Positions 22,529-61,108 of a DNA stretch of 64,000 nucleotides are shown piece after piece. A model generated the notes under the pieces. The model was not told where the DNA came from and ran no database searches. It saw nothing but the letters and a program-made list of their open reading frames with translations. Numbering within the stretch: the stretch's first letter is position 1; the number at the start of each line of letters is the position of its first letter. A program made the position numbers and the translations under genes. The stretch is from IMG/VR virus record IMGVR_UViG_3300013094_000017, positions 186,001-250,000 of that record, one strand, 5' to 3'.

Positions 22529-23245
22529 TTAAGTGGCTCGTTTAGAATCCCAATATGCTTTCCGTGCTGCTGACATTCGTTGTTTAGTTTCGTTAGACAT
22601 TACTCTGCCTTTCATTTTATTAGACATGTCTTTTTTCTGAGCATCTGTTTTAGCAGGCATAGATTTACCCTTGTTACCTTTTGATATTTTTTGTTTAGTT
22701 TCTTCAGAGTGTTTATACCCTTTTCTTGATTCTAATATTTTATCAACTGTTGATTGGGCAACAACCTTTCCTTTATGTGATTCTGATAATTTTAGTTTTT
22801 GTTTATCGGACATTGATTTGCCTTTATTTGGACTAGGTTTGCCTTTACGGGCTGCTGACATTTTTTGTCGTGTTTCTGCTGAAACGATTTTACCTGCGTG
22901 ACGTATAGACATTGCCTGGGAAAAGTTTAATTTTGCTATTTCGTAGAATTTACCTTTAGATACATGCCTTATTTGATTGGAATTTTCTACCCGTAGTACC
23001 ATCCACGCAGCGTACCACATCTTGTTAATGTGATCTATATCCTCTAACATTTTTGGCAATAGTATGTGAACTAATCGATGTTCTTGTGCTGTGAGAGAAA
23101 CTAAATTATTTTTATTATTCCCTCCACCTAGACATTTTGGAATAATGTGATGAATTTCTTTATATGTTTCTTTTGATAATTCTCTTGATCTTGCTCGATC
23201 AATGATGCTATAATAACACTTAGTATACTTGTTATCTAAATACAT
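22529..23245 (-). mobile_element. Free-standing HNH homing endonuclease with NUMOD3 repeats
   Basis: EIHHIIPKCLGGGNNKNNLVSLTAQEHRLVH; repeated xSxETxxKMS; own TAAATA and RBS. Confidence 0.85.
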
Positions 23246-25458: not shown

Positions 25459-26051
25459 GAGTACAATGCGACATTGATATAGACTTTGCCAATAGAGAAG
25501 ATATCCTGGCCAAAATACCTCATGTGATTGCCACTCGCAACGACAAGGGTGAAATTAAGAAACACAACACAGGTGTATATCTACAAAAGATTCCTGTAGA
25601 TCCCATGACCAATATGGCCACTATTGATTACGAGACTGCAGAAGCTCGAGGATACTTTAAGATAGATTTCTTAAATGTTAATGTCTATCAGGGTGTTAAG
25701 AACGAAGAGCATATTAACCAATTGATGAGTGTTGAGCCGCTTTGGGATTTACTATATGAAAAAGAAGTATGTGATCAACTATTTCATGTCAACGGATATG
25801 ATAGATTACTAGCAGGACTCAAACCTACAAGTATATTAGAGCTTGCCACAGTGTTGGCACTTATACGTCCAGGTAAGAAACATCTAGTGGTTAAATGTGC
25901 GGCTGAAGGATTTGATAGTATACAAGATGAGGTATGGGCCAAGACTGATGAAGGGTACAGCTTTAAACGTTCTCACGGAGTAGCCTACGCACATGTGATT
26001 GTAATGCAGTTAAATCTTATCTGTGAAAGAGTTAGTTACGGTTTTTCTTAA
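25455..26051 (+). CDS. Miniature DnaE (C-family polymerase) catalytic-core-like protein
   Basis: DIDIDF, KHNTGVY, GYFKIDFL, LALIRPG, FKRSHGVAY motifs in about 198 aa. Confidence 0.75.
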   Translation: MRVQCDIDIDFANREDILAKIPHVIATRNDKGEIKKHNTGVYLQKIPVDPMTNMATIDYETAEARGYFKIDFLNVNVYQGVKNEEHINQLMSVEPLWDLLYEKEVCDQLFHVNGYDRLLAGLKPTSILELATVLALIRPGKKHLVVKCAAEGFDSIQDEVWAKTDEGYSFKRSHGVAYAHVIVMQLNLICERVSYGFS

Positions 26052-26435: not shown

Positions 26436-27272
26436 ATGAAATTACCAGTCTATTTATATACCAACCTATTCGAAGTAATACTAGATTTGGACAACAACAA
26501 TAGGATTAACAACGTTATGTATCAACGCGAGCTAAAATTACAAAAAGGACTGAAGAATACAGTACAGCTCCAGTTCAAAAATAGTGACCAAAAACTGTTA
26601 AATATCTCCTCAAATCAATTCGTTTTCACTCTATTTGACACCGTAAATCAACGAAATCTGATCGAAAAGGATGTAGAAATTTTAGACGATGGTACTACCC
26701 TAGCTTTGCGTGGATTAGGTCAAGTTACATTAACGGAAAGTGATTTAGAAGGTTGCGAAAGTGTATATTATAGTGCTGCTATTAAAGCATTAGACAGTGA
26801 CGGAAGTTATGTTCCTACGTATGCTAACACCTATTACGGCGTTGGTGCTACTGTAGAAGTGCGTCACGATATATTTCCTGTGCTACTACCTAGCCAAGAA
26901 GTTAATAACTTCGATGTGTATTTCAACGCAGATCAAAATGCACAGCGGTACGAATACTACAGTGGCAACCTAAACGGGCATCCAGAGTTCAAATCAAACG
27001 TAGCATTGCACACAGTGGCCACATACATGACCAAATATAAAGGACAGGTCATTATCGAAGGTACCTTAGAAAACGATCCAGCTACATTTGGTAATTATGC
27101 TGTTATCAGCACCAAAACATATAATGGCGCTTCGGGTATCGATTACACAAACTTTAACGGATTATTTTCAAAGATACGTATCCGTTACATACCAGCAAAG
27201 AATCCAGTAACACAATTAAACAATGATACCGTATATGCAGGAACGGTTGACAGAGTGCTCTATAGAAGTTAA
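26436..27272 (+). CDS. Hypothetical late (likely structural, beta-rich) protein
   Basis: Late promoter at 26425; ATG 26436. Confidence 0.6.
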   Translation: MKLPVYLYTNLFEVILDLDNNNRINNVMYQRELKLQKGLKNTVQLQFKNSDQKLLNISSNQFVFTLFDTVNQRNLIEKDVEILDDGTTLALRGLGQVTLTESDLEGCESVYYSAAIKALDSDGSYVPTYANTYYGVGATVEVRHDIFPVLLPSQEVNNFDVYFNADQNAQRYEYYSGNLNGHPEFKSNVALHTVATYMTKYKGQVIIEGTLENDPATFGNYAVISTKTYNGASGIDYTNFNGLFSKIRIRYIPAKNPVTQLNNDTVYAGTVDRVLYRS

Positions 27273-27298
27273 AATATTTGTTTTAACTGTGAGTTGAC

Positions 27299-27357
27299 TA
27301 AATAAGAATGTAGTTCGCGGGCGTCGGAACCCCAACTACTTTAACATTATTAAGGAA
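27299..27357 (+). promoter_or_regulatory. Late promoter plus conserved structured leader of homing endonuclease
   Basis: TAAATA, then GTAGTT-CGC-GGG-N8-CCCC-AACTAC hairpin, TAACA, AAGGAA RBS; near-identical copy at 60248-60307. Confidence 0.7.
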
Positions 27358-27364
27358 TGTCAAC

Positions 27365-28123
27365 GTGATTATTTACCCTTCATCAAGAGTATTACCGTAT
27401 GTTTACATCGGAATACATAAAATAACTGGTCATATCTATATCGGATCAAGAACTGCAGAGAATTTAAAATTACCGTCTCATTTAGATTTATTTAGATACC
27501 GAACTTCTTCTAAAACAGTTAGACCCGAGTTTGATCAATATAATTGGACGATTGTAGCAGAGTTTTTCAATGGGAACGACGCATATGATTTCGAACAAGA
27601 ATTAATTTATTGTAATTGGCACAACCTATTACTTATGAACAAAAATTGTCATTACAATAGCAAAAAAAGATTTAAAGCCGTTAAAGGAATACCTAAACCG
27701 GAAGGATTTGGACAAATAGTTCGTGATAGAATGATAGGTAAATGCAAAGGCCCACAATCTAAAGATCATATAGAGAAAAGAGCAAATTCTCGCAGAGGGA
27801 AAACCGCGACCGATGAACAAAAACAAAAATATAGTTTAGCCCAACAAAAGAGGTACAGTACAACAGCAGATTCTGAAATAACTAGAAAAAGAAAAAGCGA
27901 TTCACATAACGGGGTCTATGAAATAAAATCCCCAGATGGTAGAGTTTGGATAACTGATGTTGGATTAAAAGAGTTTGCTACGATACATCAGGATGAATTA
28001 AAGATTTCATATTGGCAGTTGTTCAATGCTTATAGAAAGTGCTATAATAATACTAGCACCATCCGTAAAAGAAAAGATAACAACAATTGGCAGGTAACTA
28101 GAATTGACAAATTTGATAACTGA
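27365..28123 (+). mobile_element. GIY-YIG (Seg-like) homing endonuclease with NUMOD3
   Basis: YVYIGIHKITGHIYIGSR, AYDFEQELI, QSKDHIEKR; overlaps primase start. Confidence 0.8.
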
Positions 28124-29108
28124 TACAGTACTCCTACTCTGGAAAACAGGAAGAAAAACAAAACAGACTTCTAGCGGATGGATTTCCGGAAATGCTCCTT
28201 GTTGTGTACATCGAGGAGAAAAACCAGATCGAAGAGGTCGTGGCGGAATCTTGACTGCAAGTGGAGGGTTCCAGTGGCACTGTTTCAATTGCGGATTTAA
28301 AGCAGGATGGCAACCAGGTAAGCTACTCAGCAAGAACACTAAAGATTTACTCACATGGATGGGTCTACCCGACACCGAGCTCAACAAACTAAACTTAGAA
28401 GCCCTACGTGAAAAAGACGCAATACCCGCACCTACTAAGACATTTTCATTTGAACTACTAGATGTAGCCTTGCCTGAAGAGTGCAAGCCCATACTTGAGT
28501 GGGCTGCCGAGGGGTGTACCGAGTCCGACCTAGCAGATGTTATAGAGTACATACTAAGTAGAGGACTAACACTAGAAGACTATACGTGGCATTGGAGTGC
28601 GGCTGCTGGCTATCGTGATAGGGTCATTATACCCTTCTATGCTGGTAAAGGACAGATAGTAGGCTACACTGGTCGTAAGATTAAAGATGGCAAGCCCAAA
28701 TACCTTACCCATGCTCAAAATGGGTATGTGTTTAATCTAGATGCCCAAACCAACGATAGGAAGTATTGCATAGTAGTAGAAGGTCAATTTGACGCCATAG
28801 CTATAAGCGGTGTTGCTATTATGCATAACGATCCTAACGACATACAGGTAGCACGCATTAACGCATTAGCACGTGAAGTAATAGTGGTACCAGACAGAGA
28901 CAGAGCTGGCGCTAAGATGTTAAATGCCGCAATAGCTAATGGGTGGAGCATGAGTCTACCACCGTGGGGTGATGATGTTAAGGATGTAGCGGACGCAGTG
29001 AAGAAATATGGCAAGGTCTATACCCTAGCCACAATCTTACACTATCGAGAATCAAATAAGATTAAATTAGAGATACAAAAGAAAAAACTAGAGAGCCTAC
29101 ATGACTAA
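28104..29108 (+). CDS. DNA primase (gp61-like; Zn finger plus TOPRIM)
   Basis: NAPCCVH...HCFNCG, VVEGQFDA, VPDRDRAG, DVKDVAD. Confidence 0.85.
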   Translation: MTNLITDTVLLLWKTGRKTKQTSSGWISGNAPCCVHRGEKPDRRGRGGILTASGGFQWHCFNCGFKAGWQPGKLLSKNTKDLLTWMGLPDTELNKLNLEALREKDAIPAPTKTFSFELLDVALPEECKPILEWAAEGCTESDLADVIEYILSRGLTLEDYTWHWSAAAGYRDRVIIPFYAGKGQIVGYTGRKIKDGKPKYLTHAQNGYVFNLDAQTNDRKYCIVVEGQFDAIAISGVAIMHNDPNDIQVARINALAREVIVVPDRDRAGAKMLNAAIANGWSMSLPPWGDDVKDVADAVKKYGKVYTLATILHYRESNKIKLEIQKKKLESLHD

Positions 29109-46856: not shown

Positions 46857-46933
46857 TGGTGCTCCGTCAGGGATTCGAACCCTGCCTCCCACGTTATGAG
46901 CATGGTACTCTCTACCTAGTGAGTTACCAGAGC
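46857..46933 (-). tRNA. tRNA with CAU anticodon (elongator Met or Ile2)
   Basis: GCTCTGG acceptor, ACTC/GAGT D stem, CCATG-CTCATAA-CGTGG, CAGGG-TTCGAAT-CCCTG, encoded ACCA. G1-C72 pair and no 3GC anticodon stem, so not initiator-type. sigma70 promoter upstream. Confidence 0.9.
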
Positions 46934-60247: not shown

Positions 60248-60307
60248 TATAAATATGTGTAGTTCGCGGGATTGGCGTCCCCAACTACTCTAACAGTTTA
60301 CAAGGAA
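60248..60307 (+). promoter_or_regulatory. Late promoter plus conserved structured leader of homing endonuclease
   Basis: TATAAATA; GTAGTT-CGC-GGGA-TTGGCG-TCCC-C-AACTAC; TAACA; AAGGAA. Confidence 0.7.
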
Positions 60308-60316
60308 CTATCAGCA

Positions 60317-61108
60317 ATGACTATTTACTACCTATATATCAAGACCCACAAAATAACTGGACTTAAATATCTCGGGCAAACATCTGCATCTGATCCGCAT
60401 AAGTATCCTGGCTCAGGAGTTGATTGGAAAAATCATCTTAAAGAACACGGATATAACTATACTACTGAAATTCTAAGAGAATGTCAATCAAAAGACGAAC
60501 GTAGAGAATGGGGATTATATTATAGTAATTTATGGAATGTAGTAGAAAGTGAAGAATGGGCTAATCGTATTCCAGAAACTGGCGGCGGTGGCAATATCAC
60601 CCCAGAAGGTTGTGCAAAAGCAGTTAATACTAGAAAACAAAAAGGAAGTTATAAACGAAATGAATCTGCTATTGCAAAAGGATTAGAAACAAGATTACTA
60701 AAATACGGAACAACAAATACCTCAACTCCTGCTGGTATAGTCAAAGGACTTGAAACTAAAAAACGAAATGGAACATCTGGTAATAATTTAACTCCTGAAC
60801 GTATTGCTAAATGTTTAGAGACTAAGAAGAAAAATGGTACAATGAATAGCAATACCCCTGAGTCAATTGCTAAAGGACTTAATACTAAAACAATTAACAG
60901 AAATACACCAAATTCACCCACGGTAATATCTAAGGCACTTGAAACTCGCCGTCGAAATGGCACCATGAATACATCAACTCCTGAATCGATTGCAAAACGA
61001 ACAGAAACTCGCAAAAAACGCATACAAGAAGGTACAGACGGAGTAATAATGAAGGTAGTTTGTCCACATTGTAATAAAGAAGGCGGGCAATCGATTATGG
61101 CACTTTGA
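60317..61108 (+). mobile_element. GIY-YIG (Seg-like) homing endonuclease with about 7 internal repeats; frameshifted C-terminus
   Basis: YYLYIKTHKITGLKYLGQT, YPGSG..W, WANRIPE; repeats TPExIAKxLETxxxNGT. Confidence 0.8.

What the first reader, a model, noticed from the sequence alone, without database searches (positions are those of the whole stretch)
27299..27357. Conserved two-hairpin RNA leader shared by two divergent GIY-YIG homing endonucleases (second copy 60248-60307)
Seen: both HEGs are preceded by TAAATA-N3/5-GTAGTTCGCGGG-N8-CCCCAACTACT-Y-TAACA...AAGGAA. Hairpin 1 has an invariant outer stem and a variable loop. Hairpin 2 (ACATT/AATGT versus AGTT/AACT) shows compensatory change and overlaps the RBS. 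The proteins have different C-terminal domains, yet the non-coding leader is nearly identical. Established: T4 HEGs use RBS-sequestering hairpins. Here the late promoter lies upstream of the hairpins, so late transcription would not simply remove them. Inference: a dedicated cis-regulatory RNA motif (autorepression site) or a nuclease-associated RNA that travels with this HEG clade.
Basis: partly seen in the sequence, partly recalled or inferred. Interest (0 to 1): 0.7.

Follow-up and report, generated by a model that had tools for sequence, protein, structure and literature searches.

The report
Portable hairpin cassette heading phage homing-endonuclease genes
The two look-alike stretches are copies of a roughly 77-base promoter-plus-two-hairpin cassette that sits in front of hundreds of unrelated selfish nuclease genes in uncultured T4-like lake phages, and its hairpins appear to be built mainly for the strand opposite to the nuclease gene.

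Summary
The 30-nt hairpin core occurs exactly twice in the window (0 expected by chance), and a third copy lies just outside it in the same 259-kb T4-like phage record.

It belongs to a large family. Pattern scans and a covariance model found more than 200 copies in uncultured viral contigs. There were none in Rfam and none in cultured phage genomes.

The anatomy, from left to right:
- a T4-type late-promoter box (NATAAATA), then 3-5 nt;
- hairpin P1, 11 bp with two invariant bulged C;
- 1 nt, then hairpin P2, which holds the Shine-Dalgarno sequence;
- C, the start codon, then an inverted copy of the box (TATTTA), which is read in all three frames.

All P1 pairs and 6 of the 7 P2 pairs counted covary.

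The downstream genes are GIY-YIG, HNH and EndoVII-like nucleases. This argues against autorepression by one nuclease clade and against a guide-like RNA.

A·C mismatches outnumber G·U pairs 148 to 14, and the complementary strand folds better in 97% of copies. Selection therefore seems to act on an RNA antisense to the endonuclease leader.

Best reading: a self-contained late-expression cassette that damps endonuclease output, probably through a short convergent antisense RNA. The function is inferred; no RNA data could be obtained. Hairpins with a late promoter upstream of such genes were noted in 2009 (Dassa et al.), so this is a new variant of a known kind.

The parts
27298..27304 (+). Copy 1: late-promoter-like box CTAAATA (family consensus NATAAATA), 5 nt before hairpin P1
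   Evidence: Read. NATAAATA is enriched in this genome's non-coding DNA: 30 of 48 boxes lie in 6.4% of the sequence. The genome has a T4-type Gp23 capsid gene.
27310..27339 (+). Copy 1: hairpin P1. Lower stem GTAGTT/AACTAC, bulged C27316, pair G27317-C27333, bulged C27318, upper stem GGG/CCC, 8-nt loop.
   Evidence: Exact pattern match, predicted fold, all 11 pairs covary in 140 family members.
27341..27363 (+). Copy 1: hairpin P2 (TTAACATT / AATGTCAA). The Shine-Dalgarno AAGGA at 27352-27356 sits in the loop and 3' arm. The helix ends 1 nt before the start codon.
   Evidence: 6 of 7 pairs covary, including the basal C:G to U:A change seen in this copy (TTAA...CAAC).
27365..28123 (+). GIY-YIG-type homing endonuclease gene 1 (252 aa, GTG start). 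Its end overlaps the start of the DNA primase gene (28104-29108).
27370..27375 (.). Copy 1: TATTTA, the inverted copy of the promoter box (TAAATA on the minus strand) and the right border of the cassette
   Evidence: Conserved in three reading frames across the family. Other metagenome contigs stop matching at 27375.
60248..60255 (+). Copy 2: box TATAAATA, 3 nt before P1
60259..60288 (+). Copy 2: hairpin P1. Same lower stem and bulged C as copy 1, but a different upper stem (GGGAT/GTCCC) and loop.
60290..60314 (+). Copy 2: hairpin P2 (CTAACAGTT / AACTATCAG) with AAGGA at 60302-60306
60317..61108 (+). GIY-YIG-type homing endonuclease gene 2 (263 aa), with repeated motifs and a C-terminal zinc-finger-like CxxC. 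It is a paralogue of the third gene outside the window.
60322..60327 (.). Copy 2: TATTTA, the inverted box

Best explanation
The element is a portable expression cassette of about 77 nt for free-standing homing endonuclease genes of uncultured T4-like phages.

Parts, in order:
- a T4-type late promoter box;
- a bulged 11-bp hairpin (P1) that starts at or within 2 nt of the predicted late transcription start;
- a second hairpin (P2) that holds the Shine-Dalgarno sequence and the spacer up to the start codon;
- the start codon;
- an inverted copy of the promoter box inside codons 2-4.

Proposed mechanism. The left box gives the nuclease gene its own late promoter. It needs one because most copies sit antisense to their neighbours. 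On the mRNA, P2 partly occludes the ribosome binding site and keeps translation low.

The right, inverted box, at the same 5-nt distance from a conserved G on the opposite strand, starts a convergent RNA of about 70 nt. That RNA consists of the complement of P2 (anti-Shine-Dalgarno in its loop), the complement of P1, and a U-rich tail that is the complement of the left box. It would pair with the leader and damp endonuclease expression further.

Shown: the anatomy, the covariation, the restriction to nuclease genes of unrelated families, and the better folding of the opposite strand.

Inferred: that both boxes are promoters, where transcripts start and end, and any effect on expression.
For: - Family size and specificity. 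Two capped scans of viral contigs each returned about 120 loci. A covariance model gave 119 hits in 1.23 Mb, all with E at or below 2.4e-8 and none weaker. Of these, 105 precede ORFs homologous to the endonuclease set. The rest precede truncated or other nuclease-like ORFs, apart from one hit where no start codon was found.
- Structure. In 140 sequences, 92.3% of cells pair against 71.1% in shuffles. There are 559 double-change cells against 136, with 0 of 500 shuffles reaching this. All 11 P1 pairs and 6 of 7 P2 pairs covary, and the two bulged C are invariant.
- Left box as promoter. NATAAATA is about tenfold enriched in non-coding DNA of this genome. The genome has a T4-type capsid gene. 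The box-to-P1 spacing is 5 nt in 109 copies and 3 nt in 45 of 164, and P1 starts with G in 161 of 164. This fits a T4 late box about one helical turn upstream of the start (PMC2988020).
- Nucleotide-level constraint on TATTTA. It follows the start codon in frames 0, +1 and +2 (16, 9 and 75 cases). Members of one protein family carry MxIY, MYL or MIF in front of the same catalytic strand. The next base is T in 86% of copies against 70% TAT codon usage. Its distance to the conserved C before the start codon stays at 4-5 nt while the ATG slides.
- Opposite strand. There are 148 A·C or C·A cells against 14 G·U. The complement folds more stably in 97.4% of 191 copies, at -17.7 against -12.6 kcal/mol with Wilcoxon p 1.7e-32. 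Its mean z-score is -2.0 against -1.0. The 9 nt after the complement of P1 hold 5-6 T in most copies.
- Orientation. Both neighbours lie on the opposite strand in 70 cases, and both are co-oriented in 33 (crude gene calls).
Against: - No transcript data. No RNA run could be listed.
- The inverted box can be explained otherwise: by pairing with the left box, or in part by the conserved N-terminal IY of GIY-YIG enzymes.
- The U-rich tail is an automatic consequence of an A-rich promoter on the other strand. It is weaker than this phage's clear terminators, and the simple scan called no terminator at either window copy.
- In window copy 2 the divergent gene starts 26 nt beyond the complement of P1. 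Efficient termination there would silence that gene.
- About 18% of copies read GTAAATA rather than ATAAATA on the opposite strand.
- The T fraction and the tail composition do not differ between orientation classes.
- G+U richness explains about 2 of the 5 kcal/mol strand difference.
- A minimal version elsewhere in this genome has the two boxes only 10 nt apart, too close for two promoters.
Confidence: 0.4

Rival explanations
1. Sense-strand leader only. P1 is a 5'-terminal hairpin that stabilises the late mRNA against 5'-end-dependent decay and insulates it from upstream ribosomes. P2 is a constitutive attenuator of ribosome binding. The bulged C bind a phage or host protein. TATTTA is a translation-initiation or coding feature.
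For: - The promoter box, Shine-Dalgarno sequence and start codon are all on this strand.
- P1 begins at the predicted +1, with the 5-nt spacing in 109 of 164 copies and a T then G at positions -1 and +1.
- P2 encloses the Shine-Dalgarno sequence and spacer and covaries.
- The invariant bulged C suggest specific recognition.
- A hairpin just upstream of the ribosome binding site that does not sequester it is known for seg43(25) of Aeromonas phage 25 (PMC2988022).
Against: - The tenfold excess of A·C over G·U cells and the better fold of the complement are not expected for a sense-only RNA.
- It does not explain why TATTTA is kept in three reading frames at a fixed distance from the conserved C.
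- Sense folds of the window copies are no more stable than shuffles, with z of +0.27 and -0.44.
Confidence: 0.3
2. T4-style temporal gating by a long-range helix P0. In read-through transcripts made before late transcription, the box UAAAUA pairs with UAUUUA after the start codon. This closes a three-way junction around P1 and P2 and hides the start codon. Late transcripts begin after the box, cannot form P0, and are translated.
For: - The two hexamers are exact complements and pair in 91% of cells.
- With 10-nt flanks, the structure containing P0 is the minimum-energy fold in 49% of copies and within 1 kcal/mol in 66%. It was predicted for window copy 2.
- The seventh base is enriched for T, which extends the helix.
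- A minimal version in this genome keeps box-N10-TATTTA with the ATG in the loop.
- The logic matches I-TevI, segB and mobE.
Against: - There is no covariation, because both arms are invariant.
- With 40-nt flanks the median pairing probability is 0.014, and start-codon accessibility barely differs between long and late transcripts.
- Variants TACTTA and copies with degenerate boxes are not compensated.
- Most copies are antisense to their neighbours, so sense read-through transcripts should be rare.
- It does not explain the strand asymmetry of P1 and P2.
Confidence: 0.15
3. Autorepression operator, or an RNA partner of the nuclease. The endonuclease binds the hairpin region as DNA or RNA to shut off its own synthesis, or uses the RNA.
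For: I-TevI represses its own late promoter by binding an operator that resembles its homing site (PMC2988022). The invariant bulged C could be a protein contact.
Against: - The same cassette heads GIY-YIG, HNH and EndoVII-like genes with NUMOD3, zinc-finger or other DNA-binding parts. One contig can carry several cassettes with different stems. No single nuclease domain is common to all.
- Cassettes persist in front of truncated genes of 4-49 codons and beside a deleted gene.
Confidence: 0.04
4. DNA-level recombination module. The conserved block is a shared homology patch that lets endonuclease genes be swapped between loci, as proposed for the promoter-stem-loop (PeSL) modules of T4-type phages.
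For: - Very different genes share a sharply bounded block.
- The first codons belong to the cassette rather than to the protein family.
- Assemblies break at the block.
Against: - Pervasive compensatory change in both stems shows selection for pairing, not for sequence identity.
- Cassettes lie only at the 5' side of each gene.
- The comparison with PeSL rests on my memory of Arbiol et al. 2010 and was not checked here.
Confidence: 0.1

Closest known systems
Late-promoter plus RBS-sequestering hairpin control of T4-family homing endonuclease genes (I-TevI, I-TevII, I-TevIII, segB, and mobE of phage Aeh1)
   Same: There is a T4-type late box directly upstream of the endonuclease gene. A hairpin involves the Shine-Dalgarno sequence. 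The presumed purpose is low, late expression of a potentially toxic selfish nuclease (PMC2988022).
   Different: - In those cases the late promoter lies so that late transcripts lack part of the hairpin. Here both covarying hairpins lie downstream of the box and stay in the late transcript.
- Here the element is one conserved family shared by hundreds of genes of unrelated nuclease families.
- It also has a bulged first hairpin, an inverted second box, and a fold that is better on the opposite strand.
Conserved hairpins with TATAAATA upstream of free-standing endonuclease genes in metagenomic 'fractured genes' (Dassa, London, Stoddard and Pietrokovski 2009, PMC2677866)
   Same: Those are phage-like environmental loci, some from a freshwater lake. 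Hairpins were found in 15 of 16 endonuclease 5' UTRs, and 10 included the late-promoter box. [quoted passage not shown] One locus kept the hairpin after losing the endonuclease gene. The endonuclease gene overlaps the downstream gene, as gene 1 here overlaps the primase gene.
   Different: - Their motif sequences are in a figure and a supplement that I could not read, so identity with this cassette is likely but unproven.
- They interpreted a single sense-strand RBS hairpin.
- They reported no covariation analysis, second hairpin, inverted box, HNH-family members or strand asymmetry.
- The window copies are not inside split-intein genes as far as examined.
Short cis-antisense RNAs made from convergent promoters in phages and type I toxin-antitoxin systems (lambda OOP, P22 sar, Sok of hok/sok); cited from my own knowledge
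   Same: The predicted product is an RNA of about 70 nt with a 5' hairpin, a 3' hairpin and a U-rich tail. It is fully complementary to the translation initiation region of a potentially harmful gene.
   Different: Here nothing has been detected experimentally. Both promoters would be of the same late class, and the antisense promoter would lie inside the first codons of the target gene.
seg43(25) hairpin of Aeromonas phage 25
   Same: A stable hairpin lies immediately upstream of the ribosome binding site of a seg-type gene and does not sequester it, as with P1 (PMC2988022).
   Different: That is a single case without a described family, second hairpin or inverted box.

Membership tests
T4-type late-promoter/RBS-hairpin regulated homing endonuclease genes | T4-type late promoter box (TATAAATA-like) directly upstream of the endonuclease gene | tested here: met
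   A box of the form NTAAATA is present at all three genomic copies and in nearly all family members. The NATAAATA form is enriched in non-coding DNA of this T4-like genome. Promoter activity itself was not tested.
T4-type late-promoter/RBS-hairpin regulated homing endonuclease genes | RNA hairpin that sequesters the Shine-Dalgarno sequence | tested here: met
   P2 places GGAG half in the loop and half in the 3' arm, and pairs the spacer up to 1-2 nt before the start codon. 6 of 7 pairs covary. On the sense strand the helix is weak and interrupted by A·C cells.
T4-type late-promoter/RBS-hairpin regulated homing endonuclease genes | Late promoter placed so that late transcripts lack part of the inhibitory hairpin | tested here: not met
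   The box lies 3-5 nt upstream of P1, so both P1 and P2 are retained. Only the hypothetical box/TATTTA helix would be lost, and support for that helix is ambiguous.
Any Rfam 15 family | Covariance-model match at the family's gathering score | tested here: not met
   The only hit in the window is tRNA-Met. There is no hit at the three cassettes even at E up to 10.
Dassa et al. 2009 endonuclease 5' UTR hairpin motif | Hairpin in the 5' UTR of a free-standing endonuclease gene, with TATAAATA and two mutually complementary conserved motifs | tested here: inconclusive
   All described features are present, but the published motif sequences are not in the held text and no supplement is held.
Dassa et al. 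2009 endonuclease 5' UTR hairpin motif | Endonuclease gene lies between the halves of a gene split by an intein | tested here: inconclusive
   Gene 1 lies between a virion protein gene and the primase gene. Gene 2 lies between an unknown gene and an endolysin gene. Gene 3 lies beside the DNA ligase gene. No intein halves were seen, but none were searched for specifically.
cis-antisense regulatory RNA genes | Own promoter on the opposite strand | tested here: inconclusive
   The inverted box reads ATAAATA on the opposite strand in about 78% of copies. It lies 4-5 nt from a conserved C (a G on the other strand), which mirrors the sense geometry. There is no transcript evidence.
cis-antisense regulatory RNA genes | Defined 3' end (intrinsic terminator) | tested here: inconclusive
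   The complement of P1 is followed by AC and a U-rich run, with 5-6 T in 9 nt. The simple terminator scan made no call at the window copies.
cis-antisense regulatory RNA genes | Structure selected on the antisense strand | tested here: met
   A·C or C·A cells number 148 against 14 G·U. The complement is more stable in 97.4% of copies and has the lower z-score in 83%.
cis-antisense regulatory RNA genes | The RNA is detectable in infected cells | not testable with these tools
   No RNA run was listed for this sequence.
PeSL promoter-stem-loop shuffling modules of T4-type phages (recalled from memory) | Early-type promoter plus stem-loop flanking both sides of small variable ORFs | tested here: not met
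   The box here is of the late type. Cassettes occur once, at the 5' side of each nuclease gene. No conserved motif lies upstream of the box.

The most novel reading that the evidence does not exclude
Each cassette is a tiny two-promoter gene pair. The endonuclease mRNA and a convergent antisense RNA of about 70 nt start at mirror-image late promoters, one of them hidden in codons 2-4 of the nuclease gene. The hairpins are really the antisense RNA's 5' hairpin (with an anti-Shine-Dalgarno loop) and its terminator. Selfish homing endonucleases of unrelated families would then share an antitoxin-like RNA brake that moves with them. It may be kept by the phage after the nuclease gene decays, because it also supplies a promoter and leader for the neighbouring gene.
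Probability: 0.3. Interest if true: 0.8.

Novelty: new variant of a known kind. Interest (0 to 1): 0.62.

Why it matters
Free-standing homing endonucleases are the main mobile genes of T4-like phages, and how they avoid harming their carriers is known from only a handful of T4 and Aeh1 cases.

This is a single, sharply defined structured element. It has hundreds of natural variants, full covariation support and no Rfam entry, and it is shared by nuclease genes with unrelated catalytic folds. That makes it:
- a ready-made family for an RNA database;
- a marker for finding endonuclease genes and their remnants in viral metagenomes;
- a natural mutational series for testing how selfish nucleases are expressed.

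If the antisense reading holds, it would link homing endonuclease control to the logic of type I toxin-antitoxin systems. It would also show a promoter embedded in the first codons of a gene.

The repeat breaks metagenome assemblies of these phages, which is a practical point.

Tried and rejected
- Near and distant DNA searches of cultured phage genomes found nothing, for the loci or for an 89-nt cassette. No cultured model is available.
- Rfam gave nothing at the gathering threshold or at E up to 10.
- No RNA sequencing run was listed. The DNA runs laid on the window showed the cassette borders, but their joints had short, low-identity sides, so they cannot show presence or absence of the endonuclease gene.
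- Pfam searches for RegA and RegB in the held 259 kb found nothing, and the control genomes did not ring either, so absence is not shown. I did not know a family accession for gp55 and did not search for it.
- A conserved element upstream of the box: GTCAA occurs in only 34 of 191 copies at scattered distances, so I rejected it.
- I tested whether the inverted box or the U-rich tail differs between co-oriented and divergent contexts. They do not, so this test does not separate the models.
- The box/TATTTA helix gave conflicting thermodynamic results depending on flank length. I kept it as a rival rather than the main model.
- A full-text search for the core 10-mer found only unrelated primers. 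A search for an RNA motif associated with homing endonucleases found nothing relevant.
- A scan of species genomes found only three contigs, all in lake Bacteroidota MAGs. This is too weak for a host call.

Full report
**1. What is in the window**

The core GTAGTTCGCGGG-N8-CCCCAACTAC matches exactly at 27310-27339 and 60259-60288. There is no third match in the window even with three mismatches, and none in 100 shuffles.

Both copies precede ORFs that hit PHROG 314 (homing endonuclease). The first also has a weak GIY-YIG Pfam match; the second has no significant Pfam match. The two proteins share 26% identity over 80 residues and differ in the rest. DNA similarity begins at the promoter-like box and ends within the fourth codon.

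The window is part of a 259-kb virus record, about 73% complete and 39.5% G+C. The record encodes a T4-type Gp23 capsid protein. A third copy lies about 900 bp beyond the window's end on the minus strand. It has the same lower stem but a fully compensated upper stem (GATAT/ATATC instead of GGG/CCC), and it heads a third GIY-YIG gene next to the DNA ligase gene.

The genome holds about 12 endonuclease-like loci, and only these three carry the cassette.

**2. The family**

About 8 were chance matches without a hairpin. The rest share the whole layout.
- That scan fixes the lower stem by construction. I therefore ran a second scan anchored only on the box, CAGCATG and TATTTA. It gave 127 distinct sequences. 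Only 36 had the GTAGTT stem. The other 91 had compensated lower stems such as GTAGGT/ACCTAC, GTGAGT/ACTCAC, GTGTAT/ATACAC and GTCAGT/ACTGAC.
- On a 140-sequence alignment, 92.3% of cells pair, against 71.1% in shuffles and 23-46% when partners are slid. There are 559 cells with changes on both sides against 136 expected (0 of 500 shuffles). All 11 P1 pairs and 6 of 7 P2 pairs covary.
- A covariance model built from this alignment gave 119 hits in 1.23 Mb of held loci. All had E at or below 2.4e-8, with nothing between that and 0.01. Exactly two hits fell in the window.
- Rfam 15 has no match, and cultured phage genomes have none.
- Species genomes gave three contigs, all in lake Bacteroidota MAGs.
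- The window's DNA is held by lake and freshwater metagenomes.

**3. Anatomy**

The consensus, from left to right:

- NATAAATA, then 5 nt (109 of 164 copies), 3 nt (45) or 4 nt (7).
- P1: a 6-bp lower stem, a bulged C, a G-C pair (A-U in 11 sequences, A·C in 26), a second bulged C, a 4-5 bp upper stem, and a loop of 4-8 nt. The two bulged C are invariant in all 140 sequences although both stems vary.
- One U.
- P2: it starts with CU of CUAA and ends with AG of CAGC. The basal pair changes from C:G to U:A in six sequences, including window copy 1. GGAG lies half in the loop and half in the 3' arm.
- C, the start codon, 0-2 nt, then TATTTA.

Contigs of other phages in the same lakes match the window only from 27299 to 27375, which marks the borders of the cassette. 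Nothing is conserved upstream of the box.

**4. What the cassette is attached to**

Among 91 complete downstream ORFs, Pfam found NUMOD3 (32), several HNH families (HNH 10, HNH_5 7, HNH_3 6), GIY-YIG (5 by the strict model) and SegE-type GIY-YIG (3). PHROGs called homing or HNH endonuclease families for most.

Of the 119 model hits, 105 precede homologues of this set. The other 14 comprise truncated frames, EndoVII-like or other nuclease-like ORFs, and one hit where no start codon was found.

The cassette is therefore specific to free-standing nuclease genes but not to any one clade or fold. This argues against autorepression through the nuclease's own binding domain and against an RNA cofactor.

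Several cassettes stand before frames of only 4-49 codons, and one stands beside a deleted gene. Dassa et al. reported the same for one locus.

**5. The first codons belong to the cassette**

TATTTA follows the start codon at offset +2 in 75 cases, 0 in 16 and +1 in 9. Within one protein family, the same catalytic strand (FYVYAY) is preceded by MTIY, MYLHF or MIFSRK.... The hexamer is thus kept at the nucleotide level.

Its distance to the conserved C before the start codon stays at 4-5 nt while the ATG slides inside that spacer. The next base is T in 86% of offset-2 copies, against 70% TAT usage elsewhere in these genes.

TATTTA is the reverse complement of the box.

**6. Is the box a promoter?**

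In this genome, 30 of 48 NATAAATA copies lie in the 6.4% of DNA outside ORFs. Thirty-six genes have one within 150 nt upstream, many of them 5-35 nt from the start codon, including very large ORFs.

T4 late promoters are an 8-bp TATA box about one helical turn upstream of the start, followed by an AT-rich stretch and with no -35 element (PMC2988020; PMC7892883). With the usual geometry, which I state from my own knowledge as a start about 6 nt after the box, the late transcript would begin at the first base of P1. That base is G in 161 of 164 copies, preceded by T. Promoter activity is inferred, not shown.

**7. Which strand folds?**

Covariation cannot tell the strands apart, but wobble pairs can.

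- Among cells that are not Watson-Crick, 148 are A·C or C·A, 14 are G·U or U·G, and 45 are anything else.
- A·C on this strand is G·U on the complement. Both arise by single transitions, so the tenfold excess points to selection for pairing in the complementary RNA.
- Even after excluding three pairs whose assignment could be questioned (32-57, 68-96 and 69-95), 42 A·C or C·A cells remain against 13 G·U.
- The complement of the P1-P2 segment folds more stably in 97.4% of 191 copies, with mean -17.7 against -12.6 kcal/mol.
- About 2 kcal/mol of this difference is composition. The z-score is still -2.0 against -1.0, and it is lower on the complement in 83% of copies.
- On the complement, P2 becomes an unbroken 8-bp helix with two G·U pairs and an anti-Shine-Dalgarno loop. 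The complement of P1 is followed by AC and a U-rich run, which is the complement of the left box.

**8. Context**

With crude gene calls, both neighbours are on the opposite strand in 70 cases, both are co-oriented in 33, and the arrangement is mixed in 24. This explains why the cassette carries its own promoter. It also means that phage transcripts often cross it in the antisense direction.

In the window:
- Gene 1 is co-oriented. It lies between a virion protein gene and the DNA primase gene, which its end overlaps, and a DnaB-like helicase gene follows the primase gene.
- Gene 2 sits at a divergence point before an endolysin gene.
- Gene 3, outside the window, is antisense beside the ligase gene.

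**9. Mechanism**

I favour a self-contained cassette with a sense late promoter, P2 as a translational attenuator, and a convergent late promoter formed by the inverted box. That second promoter would yield an antisense RNA of about 70 nt that pairs with the leader. My confidence is 0.4.

The mirror geometry (box, 5 nt, G on both strands), the frame-independent TATTTA, the strand asymmetry and the U-rich tail fit this reading together.

Its weaknesses:
- There are no RNA data.
- The tail and part of the TATTTA conservation have trivial explanations.
- No terminator was called at the window copies.
- The divergent gene of copy 2 starts only 26 nt beyond the complement of P1.
- The orientation classes show no difference.
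- A minimal version has the two boxes only 10 nt apart.

The rivals are:
- a sense-only leader (0.3);
- T4-style gating by a box/TATTTA helix (0.15), which is thermodynamically marginal: median pairing probability 0.014 with long flanks, but the minimum-energy fold in 49% of copies with short flanks;
- a recombination module (0.1);
- autorepression (0.04).

**10. Relation to what is known**

The logic resembles the late-promoter and hairpin control of I-TevI, segB and mobE (PMC2988022). The defining placement of the promoter inside the hairpin is not met.

Dassa et al. 2009 described hairpins in 15 of 16 endonuclease 5' UTRs of metagenomic fractured genes. Ten of them had TATAAATA, and two conserved motifs complemented each other (PMC2677866).

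What is new here:
- the family-wide covariation;
- the second hairpin and the bulged C;
- the inverted box read in three frames;
- the spread across GIY-YIG, HNH and EndoVII-like genes;
- the prevalent antisense orientation;
- the strand asymmetry.

I therefore rate it a new variant of a known kind.

Noticed in passing
window 22529-23245 (-): A fourth endonuclease gene in the window (HNH type, PHROG 655, E 6.5e-42). It starts ATG TATTTA and has a CGTAAATA box about 30 nt upstream, but neither hairpin. It may be a cassette that lost P1 and P2, or a precursor form.
   Followed up: partly
genome C1 about 25840-25870 (-), outside the window: A minimal version in front of another GIY-YIG gene. GATAAATA is followed 5 nt later by ATG AA TATTTA, so the two inverted boxes are only 10 nt apart with the ATG between them and no Shine-Dalgarno sequence. 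The predicted late start would fall on the ATG, giving a leaderless mRNA.
   Followed up: no
L003 3569-3787 (+) and 613-945 (+), just beyond the window's end: The phage encodes a protein that looks like translation initiation factor IF-1 and an IscA/ErpA-like iron-sulfur assembly protein, next to the DNA ligase gene. I judged this from the translations only and ran no family search.
   Followed up: no
window 46857-46933 (-): A tRNA-Met gene (anticodon CAT). It is the only Rfam or ARAGORN hit in the window.
   Followed up: no
window 27247-27275 (+) and 60459-60487 (-): Near-consensus sigma-70-type promoters. TTGACA-17-TAAAAT (11 of 12) lies just before cassette 1. TTGACA-17-TAGTAT (10 of 12) lies inside endonuclease gene 2 and points leftward through the cassette toward the divergent gene. 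It could be an embedded promoter for that neighbour, as described for T4 seg and mob genes.
   Followed up: no
L015 752-782 (-), and several loci with frames of 4-49 codons (for example L050, L063, L102, L110): Intact cassettes stand in front of deleted or truncated endonuclease genes. The cassette seems to outlive the gene, which suggests that it does something for the phage or its neighbours.
   Followed up: partly
loci L004-L208 (IMG/VR contigs): Endonuclease genes with this cassette are mostly antisense to both neighbours (70 cases against 33 co-oriented, crude gene calls). In T4 only segD is arranged this way. In co-oriented cases the upstream ORF ends a median of 6 nt before the box and sometimes overlaps it.
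   Followed up: partly
L211, L212, L213: The only species-genome hits are three contigs in lake Bacteroidota MAGs (Mucilaginibacter, an unnamed Bacteroidetes, Haliscomenobacter). This is either a weak host hint or a binning artefact.
   Followed up: no
window 27237-27403, and many IMG/VR contig ends: Summed contig depth rises several-fold over the cassette in lake metagenomes, and many viral contigs end at or near it. This repeat of about 77 bp appears to break assemblies of these phages.
   Followed up: partly
genome C1 132349-132491: An HNH endonuclease gene sits directly after the Gp23 capsid gene, behind a clear terminator (GCACC-TTCG-GGTGC followed by T6). It has a plain CATAAATA box 5 nt before its ATG and no hairpins.
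   Followed up: no
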